64,000 nt of DNA from Octopus bimaculoides (Eukaryota): positions 39,760,898-39,824,897 of the forward strand of contig NC_068998.1 of assembly GCF_001194135.2 (NCBI RefSeq), in the 5' to 3' direction. The notes beneath the pieces were generated by a model that was not told the DNA's origin, did no database searches, and was given only the letters and a program-made list of their open reading frames with translations. A program made the position numbers and the translations under genes. Numbering within the stretch: the first letter of the stretch is position 1; every line of letters starts with the position of its first letter. Of this stretch, positions 1,895-35,574 are shown piece by piece.

Positions 1895-3044
1895 CAAGGA
1901 GGTATCAAAAAGTTCCAGGAATAGTTGTTTAATAAAAAAATAACTTATTTACCTAAGTTTTAATATCACCTCCTTCAAAATATTTACCTTGCGCAGCAAC
2001 ACAGTGGTCCCAACATTCCTGCCACTTTTGGAATCCAGCTTGGAAGTCAAGGACCTTCTGCCATTCACTCTAGATCACAACAACAGTGTTAAAACAGCAA
2101 TCTTTGGGCTGCATTTTCATCTTAGGGAAGACATAGAAGTCCACAAGTGCTGACGAATACGGCAGGTGCGGAATGATGACATGAGCAAGGAGAATTCAGT
2201 GACAGGGTTCATTGTCATCATGAAGGGTCCGATTCTTTACGCTCAACAGATCTGGTCACTTTCACCAAATGTCCTCCCTCAAACACTTAAAAATGTCACA
2301 GTAAAACTCTCAATTGACGGTTTCGCCTCAGGAGACAAATTCTTGATGCACAATACCATATTTCCAAGGGTAACACTTGTGGCAGATCTTCTAGATCAGG
2401 GGTTTTCAAACTTTTTGACTTGCGGACCCCTTTATATTTCAGGCTTTTTATGAAATTTATACATAAATATTTGCTTAAAATAACATATTTTTACATTTAT
2501 TTATTTAACAGTATTTAACAAATAGGTTTATTGTCAATTAAAAGATTTCGATTAAAAAAACATATATAAAATCAAATTGCCCATAAAAAGTATTTGCTGT
2601 CCACGGAACCCCTGTCTTGTCCTTGTGGACCCCCTGTGGTCCACGGACCACAGTTTGAAAACCCCTGTTCTAGATCGCTCATCATTTTCCAGAGATGTTC
2701 TTCCAATTTTGAAGTGCCTGCACCACTTGAAACATTGTGTACAACCCATTGCCTCATTGCCATAAACTTGCTGAAGCATGCTTAATGTCTCTGCAGCAGA
2801 CTTCCCAAGTTTAATGCAAAATTTCACATTGGCTCTTTGGTCCTGTCCATAACAAAATCGCAGACTACAGCATACATGTGATCTCAAAAACACAAATTTC
2901 ACAACTTGCAAAGTAAACACAGTGATGTCACTCGGCACACTGCCTCATGAAGGCCACTGCTAGCTGTCATTGCACATGCAACTAGTTGCTACAATCAGTT
3001 GGTGCACTACAGAATTAGTCTAGGAAATTTTTGATACCACCTTG
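1895..3044 (-). mobile_element. Internally deleted mariner (Tc1/mariner) fossil
   Basis: TIRs CAAGGAGGTATCAAAAAGTTCC / GGAAATTTTTGATACCACCTTG with TA on both sides. Minus strand encodes the mariner HTH N-terminus (QRANVKFCIKLGKSAAETLSMLQQVYG...SLENDERS) and decayed catalytic pieces (GIVHQEF, LHDDN, HLPYS..L.DF). Confidence 0.9.
2397..2667. mobile_element. hAT (Charlie-like) MITE nested in the mariner
   Basis: Termini CAGGGGTTTTCAAACT / AGTTTGAAAACCCCTG and a perfect 8-bp TSD TTCTAGAT at 2389-2396 and 2668-2675. Confidence 0.93.
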
Positions 3045-3769: not shown

Positions 3770-5026
3770 CAGGGTGTGTAAAGTATTTGAGGACATACCT
3801 TTTTGGGATCATTGCTGCATTTTTTGCTTACTTTGGATAATCTTTGTTCCAGAAAATAATAATGGCAGACCCTCAGCTTACTCAAGAAATGAAGAGGCAT
3901 GCTGTTATTGTGGTTTTAAAGGCTGGGTATAGTGATTTAGAAATATTTTGATTTTTAAAAGTTGCCAGATCTTTCGTCTACAAAGTTTGTTAGGAGCTAG
4001 AGACTGAAGATGGAAACATATCACCAGTATCAAAACATAAAAAGCATTCTAAACACTCTGAAATCATCAGAACACCTGAATTTATCCAAAAAGTTCAACA
4101 GACCATTGATTACAATGCCAGAAAGTCCATGAGGTCAATTGGAAAACATCTCCATGTGTCGAGGAACAGTCAGAAATTCTGTCCACGAAGACATCAGATA
4201 TAAGTCTTGTATGATGAGGAAAGGTCAATTTGTCAGAAAAAGCAAAAGAAAATCACTACATCAGATCTAAAAGGCTCTTAAACAAACTGAAAAATCCAGC
4301 AGAAGATTTGATTTGGTTTTTCTCAAATGAGAAAATCTTCAACCAAGATCAAAAAGTTTACAAAAGAAATGACAGATGGTTATGTGCAGAACCCTTCTGA
4401 AGTTCCAAATGTTATGTGTACAAAATTTCCTGCAACTGTCATGGTTTTAGGGGTTGTCAGCAATGAAGCACATGTGATGCCTCCTTACTTTCCACATGGC
4501 CTTAGAGTTAACTCTGCTGCCTATATTAAGGTCCTGGAAATAATTGTTTAGCCTTGGATAGACAGTGTATGCAATGGAAGGCAATGTGTGTTTCAGCAGG
4601 ACTCTGCACTATCACACATGGCTCTAGTAACACAGGAATGGATGGCTGAAAATTTTCGTGATCACATAATCCCTAACATTTGGCCTCCTAATTCCCCAGA
4701 TCTCAATCCATTGGACTATTACATGCGGAGCGTTGTTGAGAGAGAAGTCAATGAACACACCCATAACACCAACGATTCTTTGAAAGCTGTGAGAGTCAAA
4801 GTAATGTCCAAAATGAATCAGGACCACTTGATTCGAGCATGTAGATCATTTAGATCTCATATAGAAGCAGTAGTTGAAGCTGAAGGTGGCTTTGTTGAAT
4901 AACATTATAGAAAAGTTTTATTTTTATCCTCGTAGCATTTTTTGATAAATAAAGTTATCATCTGTTATTATATATCTGTTTTTTTTTTATAAACATAATC
5001 TGGCCTTAAATATCTTACGCACCCTG
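3770..5026 (+). mobile_element. Full-length but decayed DD37D (maT/mori-type) Tc1/mariner transposon
   Basis: TIRs CAGGGTGTGTAAAGTATTTGAGG / CCTTAAATATCTTACGCACCCTG with TA flanks. Transposase remnants run 3862-4902 with stops and frameshifts. There are 37 residues between the D of FQQD and the D of NPLD (WPPNSPDLNPLD). The first catalytic D appears mutated (FSNEK). Confidence 0.9.
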
Positions 5027-14987: not shown

Positions 14988-15164
14988 ATGGCATCAAATA
15001 CTTTTCGCAGCCAGGCCATTGCTGCAGTTGTTGTCTCTGTCACAGCTGTCATCAAAGCCATTCCTGAGACTTTGGGAATTAACAAATACAAAGAATTTTT
15101 CCAGTTCTATGATGCAACAAAACCAAAACCAATAGACAATGACACCAATGAACTTTTAGAAGAG
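14988..15164 (+). CDS. TMEM177: Transmembrane protein 177, first main coding exon (MASNTFRS...NELLEE, 59 aa)
   Basis: Acceptor tttcag at 14960, ATG at 14988, donor GAG|GTAGGT at 15165 in phase 0. Joins in frame to 16270. Resembles the TMEM177 N-terminus (hydrophobic stretch, P.T.G..Y..F.Q.Y). Confidence 0.85.
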
Positions 15165-15361
15165 GTAGGTTTCTCTGTAAGACATGCAGCCAGGTTCTCT
15201 TCCTCTTCTTTTCTTCTTCCTCCACTCACTCCCCTTCCCCTCCTCTTTTTCTTATTGAGTCAAAAAAGTAAAACACCAGTCAATTACTGGGATCACTAAT
15301 TGTCCACTCTCTCTCTTTACAAAAATTACTGGCCTTGTGCCTATAATAAAAAAAGAAGAGG

Positions 15362-15945
15362 ATTATTGTTGTTATTTTATTGTCTTTGCACAACCTCTAA
15401 TGCTGGAGATGTACTATGGTATGAGCTGTTCACTACCACTGAACTAAGATAACACCCTTTAGTTTTCAAGCACCATCCAGAGTTTTCAAGCGATTCCAAG
15501 CAGTGCTGTTTTCTGCAATTGCTCCAACCTTATTGCAGCCCCTATTTGTTCCAGGTACTTCTCAAGATTTTTACTCACTGTTCCTGGGGCTCCAATAATT
15601 ATTGGTACTACAACCACCTTTTTCAGCAACCACAACTGCTTAACCTCCCAAGCTAACCTGTCAAATCTATCAACTTTTCTTTCTTCTTTATCATATACCC
15701 TGTTGTCAGCTGGGCATGCTATGTCTCTGACCCAGCATCGTTTGCTTTCTTTCTCAATTAACACTATGTCTGGTTTCCTTTTCCCTCTCATGGTCACACT
15801 GGATCATAAAATCCCATGGGATATTTGCATTATCATATTCAATGATGCCTTTGGGTTTATGTTCATACCACTTTTTTGCTCTGTCAAGTCCTTACTTGTT
15901 GCAAAGTGTCCAATGGACAATCCTTGCTATGTTGTGTCTATAGTA
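15362..15945 (-). mobile_element. 3' fragment of an R4/Dong-type LINE with a restriction-like endonuclease domain
   Basis: RHNIARIVHW..C, WYEHKP, WDF.IQCDH, KPDIV...DIACP, VVPIIIGA.G and LQKTALLG motifs, followed by a short 3'UTR and AAT-rich tail. Intronic in TMEM177. Confidence 0.88.
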
Positions 15946-16269
15946 GAAAGGTATCTAAAGATGGCAAGCTGGCAGAATCTTTAGCATGCCAGGCAAAATC
16001 TTAGGGCATTTTGTCTGTCTTTACATTCTGTGTTCAAATTCTGCCGAGTTCAACATTGCCTTTCATCTTTTCGGCGTCAATAAAATAAGTACCAGTTGAG
16101 TACTGGGTCAATGTGATTTACTAGCACCCATCCCCAAAATTGTAAGCCTTGTGCTTATAATAGAAACAGTTATTATTATTATCATTATTATTATTTTGTT
16201 CAAATGTTTTATTGTTGTTGTTTTTTGGCATTTATTCAATGTTCTTATTTTTCTTCTTTGTCTTTACAG

Positions 16270-17013
16270 ACACTTTTCAAAATAAACCTTGATCCTCAAT
16301 TGGAGAGCAGACTTGAAATGTTTGTTAACTATGGCCAGGACATCATACACAAAGGTAGTTTACACATGAAGAGTGGTGCCATAATCGGCCTCCCGATCTT
16401 CTTCAGCTACAAAGAATTGTCAGACATCCATACAGCACACCTAAAACTGAAAAACAAATCTATTGATTGGAATACTGAAAATGGACAGAAATTTTCAAAT
16501 TCTATAATTATGAGCAACAAAGCTAAAAAGTTTGCTATTGCACGAGAAATTCATTATGTTGCAGACCACAACATCGCCATTGAGTGCGGTCTATTGGTGT
16601 TCAACATGAGTGCTGTTTATTGTGCTTATTTTGCAATGGATGGCCTTTATCGCCTCAATCAAAAGATGAAGTTGTTTGGCAAGGTTTTCTTGGCTAGTTC
16701 CTTCTACCTTATGGCCTTAGGAAGCTACTTATTTATGTATGATATTTACCAGCGCCGGAGAGACCGGCATGCCGATTCAAAAGCTGCAAAATTAGGGAAG
16801 GATTATATTGAAGGAGGAATAGAATTTTATAACTTGTTGCTGCAAAGAAATGCAGCATTGTATGCTTTGCTTGGTGAAGATGGCAAGAAAATTTACACAC
16901 CATTTGGCAACACAAAGATTTCTGTTCGAATGAAATCTCTACCAATAACTGCTCGAAGAGATTTTATGAAAGAAATTCTTGCTAAAGAATCAGAGGAGAA
17001 ACTGCAGAGTTGA
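16270..17013 (+). CDS. TMEM177: Transmembrane protein 177, last coding exon (247 aa; total 306 aa), mitochondrial inner-membrane complex IV assembly factor family
   Basis: Acceptor tctttacag at 16269. Diagnostic motifs GAIIGLP, IDW, AKKFAIARE, GGIEFY..LL..N.AL..LLGEDG.K.YTP.GN and LP.T.RRD. Confidence 0.95.
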   Translation, partial: TLFKINLDPQLESRLEMFVNYGQDIIHKGSLHMKSGAIIGLPIFFSYKELSDIHTAHLKLKNKSIDWNTENGQKFSNSIIMSNKAKKFAIAREIHYVADHNIAIECGLLVFNMSAVYCAYFAMDGLYRLNQKMKLFGKVFLASSFYLMALGSYLFMYDIYQRRRDRHADSKAAKLGKDYIEGGIEFYNLLLQRNAALYALLGEDGKKIYTPFGNTKISVRMKSLPITARRDFMKEILAKESEEKLQS

Positions 17014-17850: not shown

Positions 17851-18140
17851 GTAAATGTTATCTGCTATTAGATTCAGAAGGTTAGAAAGAAATGAAGTGT
17901 AGCATCATCTGTGTGGGAGTGGGCATTATTGGAGTTGATGGTAAGTCATTCATGTGCCAGAGGAAAAGTGTTATGGAACAAAACTGAACCTTGAATGAAA
18001 GAACTAAAATACAAATATTAAAAATCAATAGTCATTATTTAATGAATGAGTTTATTGCTTAAAAAAATCCATCAAAATCTGATTTCCCCAAATAACTTCA
18101 ATCATTTTCTTTGATTTAGCTTCCCACTGCTTGTAAATTA

Positions 18141-18499
18141 TCTTCTTTGGCACTCCATCAGTCACAACGACGAGGGTTCCAGTTGATCCGATCAACAGAA
18201 CAACCTGCTCATGAAATTAACGTGCAAATGGCTGAGCATTCCACAGACACATGTACCCCTAACATAGTTCTTGTGGAGATTCAGCATGACACATAGCGTG
18301 ACAAGGACGGCCCTTTGAAATACAAGTACAACAGAAACATGAAAGAGTACGGCAGGGTTCACCACTACCACCTGCCGGAGCCTCATAGAGCTTTAGGTGT
18401 TTACGCTCAATAAACACTCACAATGCCTGGTCTGAGAATCGAAACCGTGATCCTATGACCACAAGTCCGCTGCCCTAACTATTGAGCCATTGTGCCTCC
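18141..18499 (-). mobile_element. tRNA-derived SINE (family E)
   Basis: Minus strand begins with a tRNA-like head, GGAGGCACAATGGCTCAATAGTTAGGGCAGCGG...GGTTTCGATTCTC (A and B boxes), followed by a non-tRNA body. Confidence 0.75.
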
Positions 18500-18839: not shown

Positions 18840-19811
18840 TTTAACCTAATATCCTTCATACTTTTATTTATGGCTTTACCTATTTCAAATTCCACTGTTA
18901 AGAATAATTTACTTCATATCTCTCAAAATTACTAAGTTCATATAATGTTAAACATGTTTATCTTATACAGGAGGCATTGTATTTAATAAAATATCTTGTA
19001 ATCTGAAGTTCTTTAATGCAAAATTAATTTTCCTATTGATTCCATGTATATGGAAGTCAAACAAAAGATATGTTTTGCATTATGGAACACCTGCTTATGC
19101 AAAATTTTCATAAATGCAACATTTCTGCTCTACTGGGAATCCTGGAATTAAATTTCTCACATAAATAGATATGTTAGGTCATCTAACAAGCAAAAGATAT
19201 GTGGTCCTGTTTCTTGTTTGTGTTTATAATGAAAAAAACTATGGAAGCCATACTGGTGATGAATAAGGCAGGAGAGAGGTACATGTTGCTGTTAATAGGC
19301 ATTTCCATCACCATTAAGTTGTTTGAAGTGGGTACAATATGATGGTAGTTAGAACCAGAACCAGAAGTATTATGTTTCTTGGGTATTGAACACTATTTCC
19401 AAAGATTGGGATATTCCCCAAGGGAGAGAAAGAGAGAGATTGAAGTATCTGGTGCAAGTTGGAGGGTGTATTATTTCAAGATAATAGAGCATTGTCAGGG
19501 CAGGTATCCTTGTTGGTTTGAAATGACTGAAGTTATTTTCATACTTGGCATGTATGTATATATGGTGGTGAGTTTGATGGAATGGAGATTTCCCTTGTGT
19601 GTAGTGTGGAGCATGATGTATAGCAAGCGACAAATGGGAGAACTTCTTATAAAACCATCATCATTAAGAAAGTGGGGAAAGGTAAATTCCACAAAGTTAA
19701 CAGAGATCCTTTGTGCAAGTGACCAAAAGAAGGATCAACTGTAGTTTGGAAGATGGGAATACTTGTGGATTACCTAATGTAAAGAGTCATTCTTCATGGG
19801 TGACTGGATAA

Positions 19812-20047
19812 CTAAAATAAGATATAGAATAATAAGAGTGAAAAGGAAAATTTCAGTGCCAGAATGTCAAATTTTCCTTTTGAAGCTCTATTGCAAAGAT
19901 TTTCTAAACAAAAGCAATAGAATTTAGGTTCCTCAACAGTTGGAATTTGGCTAATATTGCGACATCCTTCTTGGTAATTTATATCTAAAAGATCGAAGTA
20001 CTGTTCCTGTTCAGAAGTGACACATCTGCGATCAGCTTTAAAAGGAT
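19812..20047 (-). CDS. Ly6/uPAR three-finger (quiver/sleepless-like) protein, last exon
   Basis: Acceptor ttattattttcag, phase 1. Encodes DPFKADRRCVTSEQEQYFDLLDINYQEGCRNISQIPTVEEPKFYCFCLENLCNRASKGKFDILALKFSFSLLLFYILF*, with CxC...LCN followed by a GPI-type hydrophobic tail. Confidence 0.88.
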
Positions 20048-20239
20048 CTGAAAATAATAATAAAAGTAATCAAGCTTGTAAAGAAATGTTATCCAATTAG
20101 TTAAATTATATTTCAGTCAATATGTGAATATATATCTCAACATGTCGTAACCTTGACTACAGAGAGAGACAAAAGATAAAGTTAATCTTAACAGGATTTG
20201 AACTGAAAATGTAATGATCTGGAGCAAAAACTGCTTTAA

Positions 20240-20446
20240 CCCTTCAGCATTTAAACTGGCCCTATCTGGCCAAAACATTTTATCTGCTTTATGTTCAAAT
20301 CAACTAGATGTGTCCTCTCATACCTACACTATGGTCTTATTCTAAAAATAAACAATCACATCATTAAAATCTCAAAGCTATGAGATAATGCATGATTAAT
20401 TCAAAACAATGTGAATAAAGAAGCATTACTTCTGAATGCTAAAGGG
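20240..20446. mobile_element. piggyBac-type MITE
   Basis: TTAA|CCCTTCAGCATT ... AATGCTAAAGGG|TAAA (right TSD degraded). Confidence 0.75.
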
Positions 20447-20560
20447 TAAATCATTCACCAGGATACCAGGAATGAAATTCTGGGAGAGAAAGTTGATTAA
20501 ATGAACTTCAGAACTTGATCCTGAAGAGATAAGTGGGATTTGGACTCCCAATATAAGTTA

Positions 20561-21820
20561 TTAGGTTGTCCAGAAAGTTCTGAGCGTTTTTGAGCTAAAT
20601 CTTTTAACTCTTCATTGAACACACCTGAAATATAACAGTTAAAACATTAGTGTTGCTTGAAGTGGTAGTGCATCTCTTCTTTGTTCCTGATTAAAAATTG
20701 ATTTATCTTTCATTCCGGTTACCCTTTATTGACATTTGAAATGGATAACCAAAAACTTCATATTCGCTTTGTAATGCTTTTCTTTTTTAAAAAAGGAGAA
20801 AATACTGCAAAGGCTTGCAAAACCATTTGTGAAGTTTATGGTGGTAGTGCTGTAGGTGAATCAACTGTTCAAAGATGGTATGTAAAATTTTAAGCTGTAG
20901 AGTTTAGCTTGGAAGATGACAGTCACAGAGGAAGACCTTCAAAATTGGATGAAGATGTTTTGAAGGCAAAAATCGAAGAAAACTCAAATGTCATGACTAA
21001 AGAACTTACAAAAGAGTTGAAGGTTTCTAAAAATGCAGCTCATGAACACCTAGTGAAGCTAGGATACATTTCTTGCTATAATGTATGGGTCCCTCAAACT
21101 CAGAAAAGAATTGCTTGGACTGGTTTTCCATTTATGATATGCTTTTGAAACAGAATGCAAGCATGCCTTTTTTGAAACAATTTGTGACTGAAAATGAAAA
21201 ATGGATTGTGTACAAAAACGTAGGGTAAAAAAGATCCTGGAGTTTGTGTAAGGATCCCCCAAAACAGCAACCAAAGATGAAAAGCCATGCTTTGTGTCTG
21301 GTGGGATTATAAAGGCATTATTTATTATGAGCTCTCACAAAACCAGACCATTAATTCTGACGTGAACTGTCATCAGCTGACTAATTTGAACTAAAAAATC
21401 AAAGAATTGAGGCCAGAGATTGCCAACGGGAAAGGGGTAGTGTTCCAACAAGACAATGCCTGACCACATGTCTTTGGCTACCCAAATAAAGTTACATGAA
21501 CTTGGTTGGGATCTCTTACCCCATCTACCATATTCTCCTGATATTGCACCATTCAACTACCACTTATTTTTGTCTCTACAGAACTCACTGCAAGGAAAAA
21601 CATTTAATTATTTAGATGGAGTCAAAATGCATCTAGATAACTTTTTTCTTCAAAACCAGTCAAATTTTATGCTGATGGAATATTTAGATTGCCTTATAGA
21701 TGGACAAACGTCATTAATAATAATGGAAATTATTTCATTAAATAAAATTTATTGAAAGGTCAATTATTTACATCCCTTTTTGCATATTAAAAAATGCTCA
21801 AAACTTTCTTTGAAACCTAA
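20561..21820 (+). mobile_element. Full-length decayed DD34D mariner in the Ly6 gene intron
   Basis: TA|TTAGGTTG...AAACCTAA|TA. Transposase from 20741 (MDNQKLHIRF...) to about 21755 with stops and frameshifts. Motifs WVP, FQQDNA and YSPDIAP; the third D appears as N. Confidence 0.92.
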
Positions 21821-22473
21821 TACAACAACTGCAAGGCATTTTGCCCAATACTCTAACAATTTTGCCACTCCTCTTCCACAAACAGATTGATCTAAGAATG
21901 CTATCAAAAAGAAACAAAAAAAAAAGCACCAAAACAAAAAAATGTATCATTATCATCATCATCATCTTAATGTAGGTATAGACCTAGCCATGTGATTAAA
22001 AAATTGGTTTCACAATCACTTGATCCTACTGTATAAGATACCTTATGTGTCTTATACCATAACATTGAATCAACTATATAATATTGCTTACAATATTGAT
22101 ATGGGAAGACAGAAACTGGAAAGACTTGCTTGTCAGTTAATTGGCTATGACCATTTGAGCATGTCCTTTAATGGCTGACAATTTCTGCATCTCTGATCAT
22201 GAGCAGGAGTAGTGGGGGAGCATCAAAGCAATGTATTGAGAAGGATTCTTTGGGGTTCGAATAAATGTAACAAAAGCAGAGTTTGAAGGAAATATTAGCC
22301 ATTTTTCATACTTTCTAGGGGTAAGCAAATAGAAAATAACAGTTGCTACCCAAGGACAAAAATCGTATTTGTGTATTGCTTAATATCCACTCTGAAATAA
22401 ATGGAGTCTGTCCACACACCAGAAAGAAAAGAGAATAATATATGAAACTTAGAAAAGATCTTCAATGTCTTAC

Positions 22474-22590
22474 CACTATAATCCACTGTTGTTTGACATT
22501 TATTGCAGCCAGAGACAACACTGTACTTGTCAATGGTGAAGTTTAGCAAATATGAACAACGGTGACACGCATAACAATTGATGTTGACCA
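22474..22590 (-). CDS. Ly6/three-finger protein, middle exon (VNINCYACHRCSYLLNFTIDKYSVVSGCNKCQTTVDYS)
   Basis: Strong acceptor tcttcctatatttcag and donor G|GTAAGA. 117 nt, phase 1-1. CxxC start typical of Ly6; joins in frame to 20047. Confidence 0.88.
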
Positions 22591-23129
22591 CTGAAATATA
22601 GGAAGAAACATGAGAATGATCAGGCAATGTAGAGTATTGGATATAGATTCAGTGACACTATCTATTCATGTCAGGAAAAAATACTAGGTAACTTTGAATG
22701 TATTTCAACATTATTCTGACCTCATCATTAAAGTATAGTCTTCTCCATACTTGCTACAAAAAAGTGATGAATGAATTTAATATTAGGAAACTAGAAATTT
22801 ATTATGTTGTGAAGCAAAAAATAAAACTTATTAATCAATAACTAATAGTTTTCTGTTTATGAAGTTTTAAATATGGGAAGACATCTCTCGAACTTTTTCT
22901 GGCCCCCCATTGAAGTAAATCACCAACCCAGTATTTTCCATGGTAGTTACCAAAGAATCACTATATAAATACAATTATACATTTATTTATGTGTAGGAAA
23001 AATATGATCATTTGGAGGTTAAAACTCACAAACACTAGCCACTATACAAGAAAATAATAGCTTAGTCATAATATAATTAATGCATGGAGCATAAAAAAAA
23101 ATAAACATGGTGGAAAAAATTTTCATTAG

Positions 23130-23334
23130 CCCTTTTGATGCTAACACATCTGAGACTACTGGTTCTTTGATACAAACTTCTTGTTTTAAAAAGCATTTAA
23201 TTAAAACATTCCATCAAATTTTCATTTCATGTTCCAAACACCAGTTTAATAAAGACAAACTAAAGTCTTAATTATTTTCAAAATTAATTCAAACTAAGGC
23301 AATGTAATTCAGCTGAAATATGGTAATAACTGTG
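23130..23334. mobile_element. Degraded piggyBac-type MITE (second family)
   Basis: TTAG|CCCTTTTGAT ... GTG|TTAA. Internal similarity (ATGTTCCAAACACCAG) to the region near 51170-51200. Confidence 0.4.
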
Positions 23335-23411
23335 TTAATCAATGTCAGGTTTTATTTTCATAGTTCCAGCAAATACAGAAGTATCTAGACATGTTTTGGA
23401 CTTATACTGAC

Positions 23412-23448
23412 CTCTGCAGAGAAATGCAGCTAAAAATCTAATATATAT
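23412..23448 (-). CDS. Ly6 protein, probable signal-peptide exon (IYIRFLAAFLCR)
   Basis: Acceptor ttttattttatag, donor GAG|GTCAGT. Phase 0 to phase 1, matching the 22590 exon. Confidence 0.55.
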
Positions 23449-23564
23449 CTATAAAATAAAACTTGAAATTTTAAAAGAATTGCATGATGTGCCTCAGTAA
23501 ATATATGTGCAGTATCTGTTTTATTATTTTTCTAATTAAACTCCAATATAATCATAATCTACAC

Positions 23565-23800
23565 CGTCTGAAAGGTATTTGTAGAAAATTTCATGACCAA
23601 ATACCAATTTTTCTGAAAGTTATGAGGAAACAAATTCAACTCGTGTGAATTATCTGAAACTCTCACCTACCTACCCTAGGGAAAAAATTTCACAACAAAT
23701 TCTGATATAATTGGAATTCACACCATATGAAAGGTATTTGTAGAAAATTTAATTATAAAACACCAATTTTTCTGAAAGACGTGAGGAAGCAAAGTTAAAG
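23565..23800. repeat. Two direct copies of an about 70-bp unit (TGAAAGGTATTTGTAGAAAATTT...), about 160 bp apart
   Basis: Copies start at about 23569 and 23728. Confidence 0.75.
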
Positions 23801-25513
23801 GATACACTCGTGTAGCTATGTCGAAAATAGGATATCATTTTGAAGGAATTTAGTAATTATTTCTAACAGGTCAAATAGTCGCTGAAAGACTCTTGCATGC
23901 CAGCAAAATTAGCCGACACTTGGAAGTCCTAATCAACGTTTCTTTTGTAAAAATTAGTAAATACTGCTAAATTAGTAAACACTGCTAAAAAAAGGATTGA
24001 ATAATCCTTTAAGTTTAATGTTAAGATTGTTTTTTGTATGCAATTTGACATAAAATCAGACACTTATATAATATATATTATACAAGAATTTTATTCGAAC
24101 GAATTAATATTAGTATTTCTTTTTCTTAAGCTTTTGACGAATTGCTAAGTTACGGGGACATAAGCACACCAATACCGATTTTCAAGAGGCAGTGGGATAC
24201 ACGTGTGTGTGTGTGTGTATAGGTGAGGGGGTAAAATGGGGTGTTTTTATGTATTTTTGACTTTGAGACAAAATATATTTTTTTACAAATGTTCACTACC
24301 TTACAAAAACTATATCAGCTAAGCAAATGACCTTCTCTAAATGCATTAAAAATACTGTCACACATTCAGAGCATTATTTCAGAAAACTGTCAGTTCCCTT
24401 TGAGAATATAAAAGACAAATTTAGCTGGGGTAAAATGAGTAGACCAAGATAAGGTAAATTTTTGCCTCTTCAATTCTCCAGAATTACATTTGGAAACAGA
24501 CTCTTGTACAACACTGTCCATCAGAATGATGAGAATTGTAACAAAAAATTTAAATATCCAGGTCAAATGACAGAGGATCATGGTAAAACAGCACATGATA
24601 CGAAATTAACAAGAATCAGCTAAATCAGAAAAGTCAAAATATTCTCTATGGTTTCTTCACTAACTGCTGGAATAGCTGTTCCCGACATATTTACGAACCA
24701 TGAAGAGAAACAATTATTTAAAATAGTCATTACTCATTTTACCCCATTTTAGACATTTTTTTTCTTTAAAAAAATAAATTGAAAATTATGAAATTAGGCA
24801 TTAGGGGGGTGGGGACAAATGACTTAGAATCCAACAGAGAAAAGAATATTGATTGTTAAATACCAAAAATTATCCAGATATTTTGTTAGTAACCTCAATT
24901 ACGATTGGGTCAAAGCTGAAAAAAATTTCTTGAAAAAAAAAAAGTACCTGTCACCTGACTATGTTCCAAATTCTCTCAGCTTTAACAATAACAACTGTGC
25001 TGACTAATTTTTACTCGTAAAGATGATGCAGCAGTACAAAGTTATGATGCAGGACTTGCAATTTCAAACAGGTAAGGAGAAAATAACGAAATCAGAAATT
25101 ACTCATTTTACCCCGCTTACTAATTTTGCACCCCCTTCGATTTATTATACATACACGCACACATATATATACAAATAATTATATATTAGATATATAATAT
25201 GATACATATTATATATAAATAATATATATTAAGTATAAAGAGAGAGAATGATTGCTATGCGTGCATAGGACTGTGTATATATTATACGCACCATAATTTA
25301 TTTTACTGTAAAGAAAACAGGAGATAATAAAAAATCTAACAAAAGCAGCCATATAAACAGTATAAAAGAAAAAAATTCCAAACACTAGGATTTCCGGTGG
25401 TTACTGTTTCATTCGTTATTTATGTTGCTGTAAGCTGCAGTCTTGTAATAGTTCCGTGATATTTTATGGTTAACTTACTCTATATCGTTTATTTTTAATT
25501 AAGCGCTATATAC

Positions 25514-25525
25514 CTTAATTGCCAT
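25514..25525 (-). CDS. Ly6 protein, putative start exon (MAIK)
   Basis: GTC-ATG GCA ATT AAG|GTATAT in phase 0, next to an ETS-type motif. Gives a 133-aa product. Other start exons cannot be excluded. Confidence 0.4.
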
Positions 25526-25537
25526 GACAATTATCTA

Positions 25538-30864: not shown

Positions 30865-30927
30865 ATGAATAGTTTAACGAGGCTATTTTATATCTGTCTT
30901 TTCACAGTTTTTGTAACAGTCGTAACT
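30865..30927 (+). CDS. TMEM9: TMEM9 family protein exon 1, signal peptide MNSLTRLFYICLFTVFVTVVT
   Basis: AAAC-ATG, hydrophobic core, donor GTAAGT at 30928 in phase 0. Fits exon 2, which starts AQYED. Confidence 0.85.
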
Positions 30928-31031
30928 GTAAGTTGATATTTATTTGTTTCATTCTTTAATTGTTCTTCAATTTGTACTGAGTAATAATTACTTGACTTTT
31001 TTTTAGCTGTGAATTATTTCATCTGATATCA

Positions 31032-31077
31032 ATGTCAGACGACACTTGTAGCAATCTGGCAAAGTGTCGTCTGACAT
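31032..31077. other. Perfect 16-bp inverted repeat with a 14-nt loop
   Basis: ATGTCAGACGACACTT / AAGTGTCGTCTGACAT. Confidence 0.9.
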
Positions 31078-31336
31078 AGATTTACTAAAATTTGTTACCC
31101 GAATCTTGCTTCAGACTATTTTTGTATATGCAAGTATTTTATTGGCCCAGTCTCTAATTGTGTAGAATCTATCATTCATTTGCTCTTTATTTCTTTTTTT
31201 TTTCCTTTTTAAAACACAACAAAAGTATATAAACCTTATTTATAATTTTTACATCATCACGACGTCGAAGACTAAATCTTTACCCTTTTGTGCTGCTTTC
31301 CTGGCAAAAAAATCTCTCTTTACCCTTTTCTTAACT

Positions 31337-31392
31337 TTAACTGTAATTAGGTTTCGTCTGGTTGTTACCAGACGAAACTTAATTACAGTTAA
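31337..31392. other. 26-bp inverted repeat with a 4-nt loop (one G-U pair)
   Basis: TTAACTGTAATTAGGTTTCGTCTGGT-TGTT-ACCAGACGAAACTTAATTACAGTTAA. Confidence 0.9.
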
Positions 31393-34289
31393 CAAAACAA
31401 AAATTTATCAAACGCACAACAATAACAGATTGTTATGTCAGAATACGAAAATATTCGTAATCCTTTTCTCTGAAACCATAGGAATTTATCGAGCGAACAA
31501 GAAAATGGGGCTCAGCGAATCCTTTGACCTGTGAGAAATAGCAACCAAATTCTTTAAATGACACCCTATTTTTTTGAGGAAAAAAAAAAGGAAAGATGCA
31601 TTGGAGAATGTAGAACCTGTAGCAAGAACAACTTTTAATAACATGAAGGTGCTCCTTTCGGGGTGTCCATAAAACAAGCACTAGTTGAGCACTGGGGTCA
31701 GTGTAATCGACTTACCCTCTCCCCCGAAATTGTGCCAAAATTTTAAATTAATATGTCGGTGCTCATCAACTTAAAGGGTTTCCAGAAGAATCATGGGGAG
31801 GTAATCAATCAGGCTCTATATAACTAAAATAGCCTTTCCTCCCCCTATACTTTTTGTAAATCACGGGGTTTGTGTTGGTTAAAAGGAATTGTATATATTC
31901 AAATATACTGCTTTAAAATAAAATCTTGGAGCACAATAAAATTAATAAAGGTTAATATTTACAAGTACACCGGCACGAAAATTCGACCTTTTAAAAAAAA
32001 AATTTTTTTTTCTTAAATAATGATTAAAGAAAGGTTGATAATTAAAGACGGCTAAAGTACATTAAAAATCTAAAATATTTAGTATCATTTTCCAAATTGT
32101 TTTTCTCTTCTTACAGACAACAATCGGCATGTGTTTATATGTGAACAATACTTAATTAGTTTTAACTGTTAACTAGGAAAAAATATTGTGTGGCATGTAA
32201 GCAATTACTTATCAAGTGATTTGGATGAATTCATCTGATGTAAATTACAGAAAAAGTTATACCCCGATCTGTTTATGTAACCGTATTCCATAAGTTGATG
32301 GAATTAAATACTCTAGCTACTAAATTACAAGAAAAAAACAACCAATCTGTTTATTAAACTATAAATTATGTTTATGAACAATTTTTTCTTCTGATAACAT
32401 TTATGTGTATTTTGTATACATAAAGTTTGATCGAAGAGAAATTTCTAAATTTCTCGTCCGATTCTAAAGGTTTTTTTTCTTTCTTTTATTCAAAGAATTG
32501 GCTGCATCGCAATTATCACACCTTGTCTTGTCTACTGATCCTATCAGTGGATGCGTACCCACCCATATGCTTGGACAGAGTTGACTGGGGCTAGATAACA
32601 TGTTTAGAATGAGAGAGAGAGAGAGGATGAGGATGAGGATGAGGAGTTATAGTACAATACTACATGGAAGCTATAATAAAATTGGATATATTACAATGTC
32701 TAGTTTCCTAAGATTATTCTTGTTAGTTCAGACTACAATCTTGGGGGCCAAATAAAATACATACTGACAGCCAAGCCTATGCGGTCGTTTGACTTGTTAG
32801 ATATTACAATCATATCTGAGTCGATTTCACAAAGAATAAATTTCTCTATTGGTCTGGAAACCAGAATCAATCTCATCAAACGTCTCTTATATAATAGTTT
32901 GATATTTGGTCAAAAGAAATACCCCTCCCCCTCTCTCTCTCTCTATCTATCTATATGTGTGTGTGTAATAAGCATATATTAGTTATGCTGTTATTGTTTA
33001 GCCCCTGGTCAGCCCTGATCTGGAAGAGTTGTAAATCATACTAAGAACTACTATCTGGATGAGTGGATGTGATAGATAAAATATATGGCAGCAATAGCAA
33101 CAGAATCTCATTAAAATCACACCCTACTAACTGTGAATGCATAAAAAAACCTCCCAGAAAATACTTTAGAGAATCTGCTGTCCCAGATCAAAAAAATACT
33201 AGATGGTCATGGCTGGAATGCCATTGATAATCCTATGTAATCATAATGTTCACATGAAGCTTAGGAACAACATTTATAAGTAGTAGTGCTGTAAATTGAT
33301 GTATTGAATTACAGAGGCATCAATAAGTGGAACTGTTCAGTGTTAAGGAATTTCTCAATAGAGAATGTAGAAGCATATTTAATGAATCAATGAGAGAGCT
33401 CTGTACTTTTGGCAGGCATTCCTATTAGAGATAACTGCTAAGTCTCCCTCAAATTAAACCCTACTGTCTTGAAAAGAGAGGGACACATTGCACAATGCTG
33501 TCCCATATCCGAGAGAAGAATGAGATGGGCATAGCTGGAGTGTCTTTGATCATGGGTCTGCTCAGTCTAAGCCTGCTCTTAGGCTAAACAATGACAATAG
33601 TAACTTGTTCATTTATGAGATGACAAGGTTGCCTGTTTTAGATTACTTAAACTGCACAGTATAATGGTGAAGTATACTTCTTTACCATATAGCTATACCT
33701 GTTCCCAATATTATGTATTCTTTGCATTAATATCTATTAATTTCATCCAACTCTTCATTTAACAGCAGTTGGCTGGTTATATTGTGTAAAATAAAAACAT
33801 TTTTAAATGCTGGTATATGGAGGGCATTGTGAATGAAAGGTGTCAACCAATGATGAAGGGGTTTTTCTATTATTCTCAAACGCCTAGTGCAGTTGCCAAC
33901 TGTTTGAGATTTTACTATCAGAAATAGTCATCAACAGAGACATAGTGACTTCATAGGCTAGGAAAATGAAGTTTATTATGTTAATTTCTTTCTTAAAAGC
34001 ATTTGTGCAATAAATAAAATAACTACACTGGGAGAATTGACTTTAGCCCATGGAATCAGTTTGTTGGGAATGTACAGCTTGTCGTTTATGACTGTGCACC
34101 CTATGAATTATTGAGGTAACCTTTAGGTGAAGGCCCAACCTGCTTGAAACCTCCATTAAATGACAAGATGGTCTTAATTGAAATGATCAACCCCTGACAT
34201 GAAAACATAATCAAAAGCATTGATTCCAGATGTGATCACCCAATCTTTAAGTTTTAGGCTATGCAGGAATACATTGTTTAATGTCTTTT

Positions 34290-34715
34290 CCATATTTAAG
34301 ATAGTAAGAGCATAATGTGTGAGAGATTTTACTGCTATTTTTAGTAGACAAAATTACCATGTTCAGACTTCCTCTTAATTGGAAATTTATGTGTGATTGC
34401 TTTTAAACACTCGTCCTGGGTTTATAAACCTTCAAGGAAACCAGTTGGACCTGCCTCAAATAATATCAGATTTTCTTGATATGTGATCAGCCTGGTGCAC
34501 TTTTGATCAGATGTCAGAAGATGTGGCACCCATTGAGCAGAAACCTTTATCATGCCAAGTTTATTGTGCTGAATATTCTCAACTATCTCACAAGATATGC
34601 TAATAGCATTGGCTATTTGATTTATTGTCAATCACTTGTCATCCATCAACATGTGGTGAATATGATCAATGTTTTCCTCAGTGGTGGCAGTTGCTGGACG
34701 AAACATTGAAATGAA
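34290..34715 (-). mobile_element. Mariner transposase fragment
   Basis: RPATATTEENID...TINQIANAISIS...KVSAQWVPHLLTSDQK motif. TIRs not found. Confidence 0.8.
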
Positions 34716-35191
34716 TGCATATAAGATTTCACAACTCCAGCATTAATCTGTTGTAGTGCTGTTATACTACTCTCTGTTTCTTTCTCTTTCTAATACTGTA
34801 GGAAAAAATGAGTTTCTTATCCTCATGATATATTTGTGTGTGTGCATACACACACACACACACACAAAGTGGATGGACTAAAAACGAAGAAAATATTGTT
34901 ACATAAGGTTCAAGGTTATGACTGTTTCAAATGGCTTGATGAACTGTTTCATCACTATATAATTAATTGATTAATTAATGAAACAGTTAGCCCTCAACCA
35001 ATCTTGTCAGACCTTAAATTCATGATAGATTTTCAGTTTCCAACAAACATGTATTGTAGTTATAAACATCAAGAACTCTTCATTCGGATAATACAGTAGA
35101 AAATGTAGATGACCGACATATCCGATTATTACCTTCCTTGATTTAGTATAAACTATTTGTTGTGTGTACAGCTGTTGTAGAACTGTTATGC

Positions 35192-35230
<39 letters not shown>

Positions 35231-35232
35231 TA

Positions 35233-35574
35233 TAAAAAATCAAAATAAGCAACACGGATTTTAAAGATGATTGCAGTACGCACGTTTCATACTACTCCAT
35301 TTATTTAAGTAATGCGAGCATTACATTAAATGCAATATGTAGAGCAATCTTCAGCTGCACGAAAATGTAGAAAATCACAGTAGAATAGACATAATTTTGC
35401 CACAATTATAATATGTCTATTCTACTGTAATTTTCTGCATTTTCGTGCAGCTGAAGATTGCTCTATATATTGCATTTAATGTAATGCTCGCATTACTTAA
35501 ATAAATGGAGTAGTATGAAACGTGCGTACTGCAATCATCTTTAAAATCCGTGTTGCTTATTTTGATTTTTTTAT
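35233..35574. mobile_element. Long near-perfect palindrome (about 160-bp arms), probably a young foldback MITE
   Basis: Arms differ by three substitutions and one indel in an A run. Confidence 0.85.

What the first reader, a model, noticed from the sequence alone, without database searches (positions are those of the whole stretch)
19812..25525. Hidden Ly6/three-finger (quiver/sleepless-like) GPI-anchored gene not recoverable from the ORF track
Seen: phase-compatible exons give a 133-aa protein with a signal-like N-terminus, ten mature-domain cysteines (CxxC start, CxC...LCN end), two N-glycosylation sequons (NFT, NIS) and a hydrophobic GPI-type tail. It has an unusually long acidic finger (EQEQYFDLLDINYQEG). 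Established: Ly6 proteins such as Drosophila Quiver/Sleepless and vertebrate lynx1 modulate Shaker K+ channels and nicotinic receptors and share the fold of three-finger toxins. Octopus chemotactile receptors derive from nicotinic receptors. Inference: this is a candidate lineage-specific ion-channel or chemotactile-receptor modulator, or a secreted-toxin-like relative.
Basis: partly seen in the sequence, partly recalled or inferred. Interest (0 to 1): 0.75.

Follow-up and report, generated by a model that had tools for sequence, protein, structure and literature searches.

The report
Octopus quiver-like Ly6 surface protein gene
This is a real, expressed three-exon octopus gene for a small cysteine-rich, probably lipid-anchored surface protein related to the insect "quiver/sleepless" Ly6 family, but it is already in public annotation and is an ordinary family member whose function is untested.

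Summary
The gene is real and lies on the minus strand. RNA contigs from six runs and raw reads from two runs confirm the 22474>20047 splice. Three RNA contigs fix the first donor at 25292. The protein is 137 aa, not 133, and starts at ATG 25352. The ATG at 25525 is an 8-codon upstream ORF in the 5'UTR.

The protein is identical to Octopus bimaculoides XP_014789546.1 (LOC106883152). UniProt auto-names it "Protein quiver". Orthologues with the same neighbouring genes exist in O. vulgaris and O. sinensis (dN/dS 0.13-0.23).

Pfam finds no family. Three other lines link it to insect QVR proteins (PF17064):
- a profile-profile match (91.5 %, score 43.7; shuffled controls reach at most 24.5);
- all ten Cys, the CFCxxxxCN end and a loop-1 glycosylation sequon align;
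- both phase-1 introns sit at the same positions in octopus, Lingula and Anopheles.

Structure models were of low confidence (pLDDT 54). Fold searches gave no significant hit, though three-finger proteins were over-represented among the top hits.

The "acidic finger" is the conserved C6-C7 segment, not a finger. Channel or chemotactile-receptor modulation remains untested. The finding is already annotated and of low interest.

The parts
25292..25536 (-). Exon 1: 5'UTR (25536..25353) plus the first 61 coding nt (ATG 25352..25292; aa 1-20 and the first base of codon V21). Encodes the signal peptide.
   Evidence: RNA contigs end at 25478 (X4) and 25536 (X9). Contig lengths imply ends near 25502 (X2) and 25523 (X10). 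All contigs that reach the donor stop at 25292 and continue with the exon 2 sequence. The translation equals P0001.
25499..25525 (-). Upstream ORF 1 in the 5'UTR (MAIKVYSA*).
   Evidence: Sequence. It lies inside the transcribed exon 1.
25401..25412 (-). Upstream ORF 2 in the 5'UTR (MKQ*).
   Evidence: Sequence.
22591..25291 (-). Intron 1 (2701 nt, GT..AG, phase 1). It splits codon V21, 5 residues before Cys1.
   Evidence: Same phase and same distance to Cys1 in Lingula and in Anopheles qvr.
22474..22590 (-). Exon 2 (117 nt): Cys1-Cys5, loop 1 with sequon N37-F-T (22543..22535) and the first half of loop 2.
20048..22473 (-). Intron 2 (2426 nt, GT..AG, phase 1). It splits codon D60, 8 residues before Cys6, at the loop 2 tip. 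It contains transposon debris.
   Evidence: The junction is seen in six RNA contig sets and in 13 raw reads. Anopheles qvr has the same phase and the same distance to Cys6.
19812..20047 (-). Coding part of exon 3. It holds the second half of loop 2 (20047..20025), the C6-C7 segment (20021..19965), sequon N90-I-S (19958..19950), CFCLENLCN, the candidate GPI attachment site N112 (19892..19890), the hydrophobic C-terminal signal (19889..19815) and stop TAG (19814..19812).
   Evidence: N112 aligns with the predicted GPI site N127 of Drosophila SSS (PMC4735452).
18248..19811 (-). 3'UTR, at least about 1.56 kb. It runs into the high-copy repeat at 18044-18445, where assemblies break.
   Evidence: Spliced contigs continue below the stop codon: X2 (2129 nt) to about 18248, X10 to about 18405, X9 to 18450.

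Best explanation
A single-copy, three-exon gene on the minus strand (O. bimaculoides LOC106883152) encodes a 137-aa precursor of a GPI-anchored, N-glycosylated, single LU-domain (Ly6/uPAR) protein of the insect quiver/sleepless (QVR) type.

Shown here:
- the exon structure and that the gene is expressed;
- purifying selection and conserved neighbouring genes in three Octopus species;
- remote homology to insect QVR proteins, with all ten Cys aligned;
- the CFCxxxxCN end, a loop-1 N-x-T sequon, a P[FY]xxxRR-C motif in loop 2, and identical phase-1 intron positions.

Inferred from the family:
- The N-terminal hydrophobic stretch directs the protein into the ER.
- Five disulfides (1-5, 2-3, 4-6, 7-8, 9-10) lock a three-finger beta-sheet.
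- The C-terminal hydrophobic peptide is exchanged for a GPI anchor, at or just after N112.
- The protein sits on the outer leaflet and binds another membrane protein through its loops, as an accessory subunit.

The partner is unknown. A Shaker-type K+ channel or a nicotinic-type receptor, as for Drosophila SSS, is the leading guess. I put that guess at about 0.3.
For: Gene model:
- Both splice junctions are seen in RNA.
- The translation is identical to XP_014789546.1.

Constraint:
- Exon lengths of 61/117/236 nt are the same in three Octopus species, and dN/dS is 0.13-0.23.
- The flanking genes, a TMEM9-family gene and a 306-aa gene, are the same in all three species.

Homology to QVR:
- hhalign of the octopus/Lingula profile against 14 insect QVR orthologues (all PF17064) gives Prob 91.5 %, E 8.8e-7, score 43.7 over 89 columns.
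- 200 column shuffles score 13.0 +/- 2.7 (max 24.5). 200 shuffles with the Cys columns held fixed score 13.6 +/- 2.7 (max 22.3).
- An HMM of the octopus family scores up to 22.8 bits on insect QVR sequences.
- MAFFT on its own aligns C26, Y27, C32, N37, C49, R66, R67, T70, C88, S92, C104-F-C106 and C111-N112.

Gene structure:
- Both introns are phase 1. The split codons lie 5 aa before Cys1 and 8 aa before Cys6 in octopus and in Anopheles qvr, and 5 and 6 aa before in Lingula.
- This matches the published LU-gene rule of three exons, phase-1 introns and an intron at the tip of loop 2 (PMC6600238, PMC4839075).

LU signature:
- 87 residues with ten Cys and Asn after Cys10 (PMC6600238).

Fold:
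- 13 of the top 50 Foldseek hits are three-finger proteins. They include LYPD6 (6gbi, rank 1), uPAR, Lynx1, bucandin, cardiotoxins and ALK1/ALK3 ectodomains.

Anchor and glycan:
- SSS is GPI-anchored and N-glycosylated. Its predicted sites N57 and N127 align with octopus N37 and N112 (PMC4735452).
Against: - Pfam-A gives no hit to UPAR_LY6, QVR or any toxin family at E<=10 for the octopus, Lingula or L001 proteins.
- Profile searches of PDB sequences give only non-significant hits: CD177 at E 0.1-0.6, and zinc-ribbon ribosomal proteins.
- hhalign against CD59 and against Lynx1 aligns only the C-terminal C..CN motif.
- Both AlphaFold2 models have low confidence (mean pLDDT 53.9 and 53.8), and loop 1 is essentially unmodelled.
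- No Foldseek hit reaches E<0.5.
- Identity to insect QVR is only 23 %, while insect orthologues share 60-90 %. Orthology to qvr itself is therefore not shown.
- The signal peptide and GPI signal were judged by hydropathy and alignment only.
- No tissue information and no functional data are available.
Confidence: 0.85

Rival explanations
1. It has the same fold and anchor, but works like the Drosophila Ly6 proteins Boudin, Coiled, Crooked and Crimpled. In this reading it helps assemble septate junctions and epithelial or glial barriers, or has another non-channel role, and does not tune ion channels.
For: Four GPI-anchored single-LU Drosophila proteins are needed for septate junctions, and the 45 fly LU genes have very diverse roles (PMC6600238, PMC3058042 abstract). 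The gene is detected in RNA contigs of many runs from at least five studies, which would fit broad expression. No paralogue cluster or neural neighbour gene points to a channel role.
Against: The only family members it could be compared with here are qvr orthologues, and it matches them over the whole domain. The match includes the C-terminal arm of loop 2 (octopus DPFKADRR-C, insect SPYEVVRR-x-C). Loop 2 is the part of SSS required for binding Shaker and nAChR (PMC4735452). One raw run shows no reads on the exons while a sister run does, so expression is not uniform.
Confidence: 0.3
2. It is a secreted toxin-like three-finger protein, for example a salivary-gland product. In this reading the C-terminal hydrophobic stretch is not a GPI signal.
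For: It has the same cysteine framework as three-finger toxins, and toxins appear among the weak Foldseek hits.
Against: The hydrophobic C-terminus is conserved in three Octopus species, in Lingula and in the L001 homologue. dN/dS is 0.13-0.23, not the diversifying pattern of toxin genes. The gene is single-copy with no tandem array in the window. RNA depth is low to moderate.
Confidence: 0.04
3. It is not an LU domain at all. In this reading it is an unrelated cysteine-rich secreted or membrane protein whose CxxC...CxxC pattern and C..CN end mimic Ly6 by chance.
For: There is no Pfam hit. The structure models have low confidence. PDB profile searches pick up zinc-ribbon ribosomal proteins through the CxxC pairs.
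Against: The hhalign score lies far above both shuffle controls, including the control that keeps the Cys columns fixed. The intron phases and positions are identical to a bona fide PF17064 gene. The protein also has an aligned sequon, a signal peptide and a GPI-type tail.
Confidence: 0.05

Closest known systems
Drosophila QUIVER/SLEEPLESS (QVR/SSS) and its insect orthologues (Pfam PF17064, QVR)
   Same: - Signal peptide, a single 10-Cys LU domain and a GPI-type tail.
- The framework C-x2-C ... C-N-x-C ... RR-x-C-TS ... C-F-C-x4-C-N.
- A loop-1 N-x-T sequon at the aligned position.
- The Asn after Cys10 aligns with the predicted GPI site.
- Phase-1 introns at the same two positions.
(PMC4735452)
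   Different: - Only 23 % identity.
- It is not found by the Pfam QVR model.
- The Cys2-Cys3 spacing is 2 residues instead of 7.
- The C6-C7 segment is 5 residues longer and acidic, and loop 3 is 5 residues longer.
- Loop 2 is mixed-charge rather than strongly basic.
- Insect qvr orthologues are 60-90 % identical across orders, so this is a relative and not a demonstrated orthologue.
- Its function is untested.
Lingula anatina LOC106162295 (XP_013394977.1, uncharacterized)
   Same: It is the closest full-length relative outside Octopus: 31 % identity, the same ten Cys, CVT[SA] after Cys6, CFC...CN, three coding exons and both introns in phase 1.
   Different: Loop 1 is shorter and carries no sequons. 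The C6-C7 segment is not acidic. The neighbouring genes are not shared.
Vertebrate GPI-anchored LU proteins (Lynx1, CD59, LYPD6)
   Same: Three-exon gene with phase-1 introns, ten Cys, Asn after Cys10 and a GPI tail. They are among the top Foldseek hits (LYPD6 rank 1, Lynx1 rank 14) (PMC6600238, PMC4839075).
   Different: No detectable sequence similarity beyond the terminal C..CN motif. The end is C-x-C rather than CC. The loop spacings differ, and the domain is 87 residues long against about 70.
Drosophila septate-junction Ly6 proteins (Boudin, Coiled, Crooked, Crimpled)
   Same: The same protein class, a GPI-anchored single LU domain with ten Cys (PMC6600238).
   Different: They could not be compared directly here because no sequences were in hand. 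Their function in junction assembly is the main functional alternative.
Snake three-finger toxins
   Same: The fold family. Several appear among the weak structural hits.
   Different: The toxins are secreted, lack the GPI signal, mostly lack the 2-3 disulfide and evolve under diversifying selection. This gene keeps its tail and has dN/dS of about 0.2.

Membership tests
Ly6/uPAR (LU) domain superfamily | 60-90 residues with ten cysteines in the plesiotypic order (PMC6600238) | tested here: met
   C26..N112 spans 87 residues and holds exactly ten Cys. All ten are conserved in three Octopus species and in Lingula.
Ly6/uPAR (LU) domain superfamily | A non-glycosylated Asn directly after the tenth Cys (PMC6600238) | tested here: met
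   C111-N112-R-A. This is not a sequon. The position is invariant in all 18 aligned octopus, Lingula, L001 and insect sequences.
Ly6/uPAR (LU) domain superfamily | N-terminal Leu-x-Cys-x-x-Cys and C-terminal Cys-Cys-x4-Cys-Asn motifs (PMC4839075) | tested here: inconclusive
   The N-terminus reads I-N-C-Y-A-C, with Ile in place of Leu. The C-terminus reads C-F-C-LENL-C-N, with one residue between Cys8 and Cys9. This departs from the vertebrate CC but is the same as in insect QVR (CFCEEDMCN).
Ly6/uPAR (LU) domain superfamily | Three-exon gene: a signal-peptide exon plus two LU exons, phase-1 introns, and the internal intron at the tip of loop 2 (PMC6600238, PMC4839075) | tested here: met
   Coding exons are 61, 117 and 236 nt. 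Both introns are phase 1. Intron 2 lies between Cys5 and Cys6.
Ly6/uPAR (LU) domain superfamily | Three-finger fold | tested here: inconclusive
   The AlphaFold2 models have mean pLDDT 53.9 and 53.8. Foldseek gives no hit with E<0.5, but 13 of the top 50 hits are three-finger proteins, with LYPD6 first.
Ly6/uPAR (LU) domain superfamily | Disulfide connectivity 1-5, 2-3, 4-6, 7-8, 9-10 | not testable with these tools
   Model coordinates cannot be read and the models have low confidence. This needs mass-spectrometric mapping or a solved structure.
Ly6/uPAR (LU) domain superfamily | A match to the curated family HMMs (Pfam UPAR_LY6, QVR and related models) | tested here: not met
   The full protein, the mature domain, both Octopus orthologues, the Lingula protein and the L001 protein all give no such family at E<=10.
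QVR / sleepless-type Ly6 proteins (PF17064) | Sequence homology to bona fide family members | tested here: met
   hhalign gives Prob 91.5 %, score 43.7 over 89 columns. Shuffle controls reach at most 24.5, and at most 22.3 with the Cys columns fixed. The octopus-family HMM scores up to 22.8 bits on insect QVR.
QVR / sleepless-type Ly6 proteins (PF17064) | One-to-one orthology with Drosophila qvr | tested here: inconclusive
   Identity is 23 % against 60-90 % among insect orthologues. No other fly Ly6 paralogues were available for a tree. Neighbouring genes were not compared with insects.
QVR / sleepless-type Ly6 proteins (PF17064) | GPI anchoring and N-glycosylation in loop 1, as shown for SSS (PMC4735452) | not testable with these tools
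   At sequence level, N37-F-T aligns with the SSS N57-Y-T sequon and N112 aligns with the predicted SSS GPI site N127. A spacer and a roughly 17-residue hydrophobic tail that ends the protein follow N112. No GPI or signal-peptide predictor was available.
QVR / sleepless-type Ly6 proteins (PF17064) | Modulation of Shaker K+ channels and nAChRs through loop 2 | not testable with these tools
   Only the loop 2 arm motif P-[FY]-x3-R-R-(x)-C is shared. This needs co-expression electrophysiology.
Secreted three-finger toxins | No membrane anchor, and rapid diversifying evolution in gene arrays | tested here: not met
   The hydrophobic C-terminal tail is conserved. dN/dS is 0.13-0.23. There is no paralogue in the 64-kb window.

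The most novel reading that the evidence does not exclude
This single-copy lophotrochozoan QVR-like protein could be the cephalopod working counterpart of Drosophila SLEEPLESS. In this reading it is a membrane-tethered 'prototoxin' whose loop 2 tunes Shaker-type K+ channels and nicotinic-type receptors, possibly including the nAChR-derived chemotactile receptors of the suckers. It would then bear on octopus excitability or sleep. Nothing here excludes this reading, and nothing beyond family resemblance and a shared loop 2 motif supports it.
Probability: 0.08. Interest if true: 0.6.

Novelty: already known. Interest (0 to 1): 0.2.

Why it matters
As it stands, the finding matters little. The gene model is in RefSeq for three Octopus species, and UniProt already labels it 'Protein quiver'. 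LU-domain proteins are numerous in all animals.

What this check adds:
- transcript evidence for the exact exon borders and the upstream ORFs;
- the point that Pfam models miss the protein while profile-profile comparison and intron positions tie it to the insect QVR type;
- a brachiopod homologue, which shows the subfamily predates cephalopods;
- a correction of the 'acidic finger' reading.

If someone wanted to study Ly6-type modulators of octopus Kv1 channels, nicotinic receptors or chemotactile receptors, this would be one reasonable candidate to clone. It has no special claim over other octopus LU genes.

Tried and rejected
- Pfam-A scans at E<=10 of the full protein, the mature domain, the orthologues, the Lingula protein and the L001 protein gave no relevant family.
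- The word-indexed search of 5.8 billion proteins found only the Octopus cluster, Lingula and one Logan contig.
- The full HMMER scan of 1.84 billion representatives added only spurious bacterial repeat proteins.
- PDB sequence searches with two profiles gave nothing significant. CD177 and zinc-ribbon proteins came up by CxxC pattern.
- hhalign against CD59 and against Lynx1 (both sequences verified) aligned only the terminal motif.
- AlphaFold2 with 5 and with 33 sequences gave low-confidence models.
- Foldseek against the PDB gave no significant hit.
- An alternative exon 1 donor at 25307 (132-aa model) was rejected, because all RNA contigs use 25292.
- A search for paralogues in the window by tblastn and by a Cys-motif regex found none.
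- tRNA and Rfam scans of the window were empty.
- Tissue of expression could not be obtained. Run metadata are coded, library words carry no tissue terms, and no PacBio RNA run was listed.
- No paper mentions the gene identifiers, and no cephalopod Ly6 literature was found.
- The 22 nt upstream of 25536 in one contig match nothing in the window.

Full report
**1. What is in the sequence**

Read on the minus strand, the region holds three coding exons with canonical splice sites:
- Exon 2 is 22590..22474, preceded by ...tatatttcag and followed by gtaaga.
- Exon 3 starts at 20047, preceded by ...attattttcag, and runs to the stop TAG at 19814-19812.
- Exon 1 holds the ATG at 25352.

For exon 1, the sequence alone allows two donors. 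A donor at 25307 gives 132 aa and a donor at 25292 gives 137 aa.

**2. Transcript evidence**

Twenty-four RNA runs of the same organism hold the 3' exon. The evidence for each feature is as follows.
- **Exon 2-exon 3 junction.** The joint 20047<->22474 skips 2426 nt, with CT..AC on the + strand, which is GT..AG on the gene strand. It appears in assembled RNA contigs of X1, X4, X9, X2 and X10. It also appears in raw reads of X19 (5 reads) and X20 (8 reads).
- **Exon 1 donor.** Contigs of X1, X4 and X9 all stop matching at 25292. They continue with GGTGACACGCATAACAATTGATGTTGACCA, which is the reverse complement of the start of exon 2. The donor is therefore 25292.
- **5' end.** Contigs reach 25478, about 25502, about 25523 and 25536. 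The 5'UTR is therefore about 150-185 nt.
- **Upstream ORFs.** A second mini-ORF, MKQ*, lies at 25412-25401.
- **3'UTR.** Spliced contigs run on below the stop codon to about 18248-18450. The 3'UTR is therefore at least about 1.4-1.6 kb and ends in or beyond a high-copy repeat.
- **Variable expression.** Run X21 has no read on the exons, while X20 of the same study has reads. Expression therefore differs between samples. The tissues are not disclosed.

**3. The protein**

The 137-aa product is:

MAAFVRFFIISCFLYSKINYVVNINCYACHRCSYLLNFTIDKYSVVSGCNKCQTTVDYSDPFKADRRCVTSEQEQYFDLLDINYQEGCRNISQIPTVEEPKFYCFCLENLCNRASKGKFDILALKFSFSLLLFYILF

Its features are:
- a hydrophobic N-terminus at residues 1-16;
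- ten cysteines between C26 and C111, followed by N112;
- sequons N37-F-T and N90-I-S;
- a C-terminus made of a short polar spacer (RASKGKFD) and a hydrophobic stretch that ends the protein.

It is wrong in the length (133 aa) and in the start of the first coding exon.

**4. It is already annotated**

- The product is identical to XP_014789546.1, 'uncharacterized protein LOC106883152 [Octopus bimaculoides]'.
- It is also UniProt A0A0L8FIE1, which UniProt names 'Protein quiver'.
- O. vulgaris (CAI9735691.1, also 'Protein quiver') and O. sinensis (XP_029646070.1) have 93 %-identical orthologues.
- The locus is on CM046618.1 at about 39.77-39.80 Mb.
- In all three species the gene lies between a divergent TMEM9-family gene and a convergent 306-aa gene.
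- The coding exons are 61, 117 and 236 nt in all three species, and pairwise dN/dS is 0.13-0.23. This is a constrained, functional gene.
- No paper in the library cites its identifiers.

**5. Family assignment**

Pfam-A gives no UPAR_LY6, QVR or toxin family at E<=10 for any member.

Exhaustive protein searches find only two real relatives outside Octopus:
- Lingula anatina LOC106162295, with 31 % identity and the same ten Cys.
- A Logan contig of unknown origin (L001), which carries the exon 3 equivalent behind an intron in the same phase.

I then recalled the Drosophila QVR/SSS sequence. I checked it in two ways:
- A search with it returned 343 insect proteins, all carrying PF17064.
- Its numbering and the published primers agree with PMC4735452 (N57, N127).

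The comparison with insect QVR gave these results:
- A profile of the octopus family against a profile of 14 insect QVR orthologues gave hhalign Prob 91.5 %, E 8.8e-7, score 43.7 over 89 columns. All ten Cys were in register.
- Two hundred column shuffles gave 13.0 +/- 2.7 (max 24.5). Two hundred shuffles that kept the Cys columns fixed gave 13.6 +/- 2.7 (max 22.3). The reversed alignment gave 11. The match is therefore not only a cysteine framework.
- The octopus-family HMM scores insect QVR sequences at up to 22.8 bits.
- MAFFT independently aligns CY.C, R-C, the N-x-T sequon, CN.C, P[FY]xxxRR, C.TS, CFC and C-N.

**6. Gene structure as independent evidence**

| Species | Intron before the LU domain | Intron within loop 2 |
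|---|---|---|
| Octopus | phase 1, splits V21, 5 aa before Cys1 | phase 1, splits D60, 8 aa before Cys6 |
| Lingula | phase 1, splits T22, 5 aa before Cys1 | phase 1, splits G56, 6 aa before Cys6 |
| Anopheles bellator qvr | phase 1, splits T30, 5 aa before Cys1 | phase 1, splits P79, 8 aa before Cys6 |

This is also the published signature of LU-domain genes. They have three exons, phase-1 introns and an internal intron at the tip of loop 2, with the GPI signal in exon 3 (PMC6600238, PMC4839075).

**7. Fold**

- Two AlphaFold2 runs, with 5 and with 33 aligned sequences, gave mean pLDDT 53.9 and 53.8. Loop 1 was unmodelled. The region from Cys5 to Cys9 reached pLDDT 55-77. It was predicted as two strands for loop 2, a helix at aa 71-79, and two more strands.
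- Foldseek against the PDB gave no hit better than E = 0.5.
- Thirteen of the 50 best hits for the second model are three-finger proteins: LYPD6 (6gbi, identified via PMC6600238), uPAR, Lynx1, bucandin, calciseptine, MT7, cardiotoxins and ALK1/ALK3 ectodomains.
- I count this as weak support and not as a passed test.

**8. The 'acidic finger'**

The primers in PMC4735452 define SSS loop 2 as the stretch between CCV and MCTSQ, that is Cys5..Cys6. Loop 3 is the stretch between Cys7 and Cys8.
- In octopus, loop 2 is aa 53-67 (QTTVDYSDPFKADRR).
- The acidic stretch EQEQYFDLLDINYQEG (aa 72-87) lies between Cys6 and Cys7.
- It aligns with insect TSQLQINLFMVDHV and with Lingula TAMGEAYLRTLGIDTGPG.
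- It is predicted to be partly helical.
- It is 5 residues longer than in insects, and it is acidic in Octopus and L001 only.
- It is therefore a conserved core-adjacent segment with a lineage-specific charge, and not an extra-long finger.
- The part of SSS shown to be needed for Shaker and nAChR interaction is loop 2 (PMC4735452). Its C-terminal arm is the best conserved loop element: DPFKADRR-C in octopus against SPYEVVRR-x-C in insects.

**9. Mechanism**

Shown here:
- a spliced, expressed and constrained gene;
- remote homology and shared gene architecture with QVR-type LU proteins.

Inferred from the family:
- ER entry via the signal peptide and five disulfides;
- N-glycosylation at N37 (aligned with SSS N57) and possibly at N90;
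- GPI attachment at or near N112 (aligned with the predicted SSS site N127);
- action on the cell surface as a loop-mediated binding partner of another membrane protein.

The identity of the partner is open. A channel or receptor modulator of the SSS or Lynx1 kind is the leading guess, at about 0.3. A junction-assembly role of the Boudin/Coiled kind (PMC6600238) is about equally plausible. A secreted toxin-like role is unlikely, given the conserved tail, dN/dS of about 0.2 and the single copy.

**10. Verdict**

The family reading is supported, but it is not new. The 'hidden', 'lineage-specific' and 'acidic finger' elements are not supported. The functional ideas are untested. The finding is an ordinary, already annotated member of a large family.

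Noticed in passing
window 25499-25525 and 25401-25412 (minus strand): Two very short upstream ORFs (MAIKVYSA*, MKQ*) lie in the 5'UTR ahead of the real start codon at 25352. That start codon has a weak -3 context (T).
   Followed up: partly
window 25536 (minus strand, transcript 5' end): One RNA contig (X9) carries 22 further bases upstream of 25536 (CAATGAAGTCGCAGGGTTGGGG in mRNA sense). They match nothing in the 64-kb window, and there is no AG acceptor at that point. This is either an upstream exon outside the window or an assembly chimera.
   Followed up: partly
window 20202-20569, 22042-22409, 21456-21755 (intron 2): Intron 2 contains two high-copy repeats whose RNA-contig depths run into the thousands. 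It also contains a mariner-like transposase remnant (99-aa ORF on the + strand, antisense to the gene).
   Followed up: partly
window 15900-16300, 18044-18445, 24066-24249: These are further high-copy repeats that are heavily represented in RNA assemblies. The 15900-16300 element has six diverged copies elsewhere in the window (38.8-50.5 kb). The 18044-18445 element breaks the assembly of the 3'UTRs of the two convergent genes.
   Followed up: partly
window 14988-17013 (+ strand): This is a convergent neighbour gene for a 306-aa protein with no Pfam family. Its large second exon is the 269-aa ORF at 16204-17013. It is expressed, and it sits in the same position in O. sinensis and O. vulgaris.
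   Followed up: partly
window about 30865-35352 and beyond (+ strand): This is a divergent neighbour gene of the TMEM9 family (PF05434, 215-aa product). It sits in the same position in all three Octopus genomes.
   Followed up: no
window 2552-2938 (-) and 4588-4902 (+): These are more mariner/Tc1-type transposase fragments. The second gives a weak DDE_3 hit (E 1.7e-4).
   Followed up: no
window 17377 and 19806: Two variants appear in RNA contigs: a 26-nt insertion after 17377 in run X4, and G>T at 19806 (6 nt past the stop codon) in run X9. No A-to-G type differences were seen in the coding exons.
   Followed up: no
window about 3.6 kb and about 41.5 kb: Runs of N (assembly gaps) lie inside microsatellite-rich sequence. 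They show up as X in the ORF translations.
   Followed up: no
L001 174-761 (Logan contig SRR29346471_267893): The gene caller read through a TGA codon, so the 195-aa 'protein' P0003 is an artefact. The real homologue ends ...LLLLLLQQFVR* and begins at an intron acceptor (ttttcag|AT) in the same phase as octopus exon 3.
   Followed up: yes
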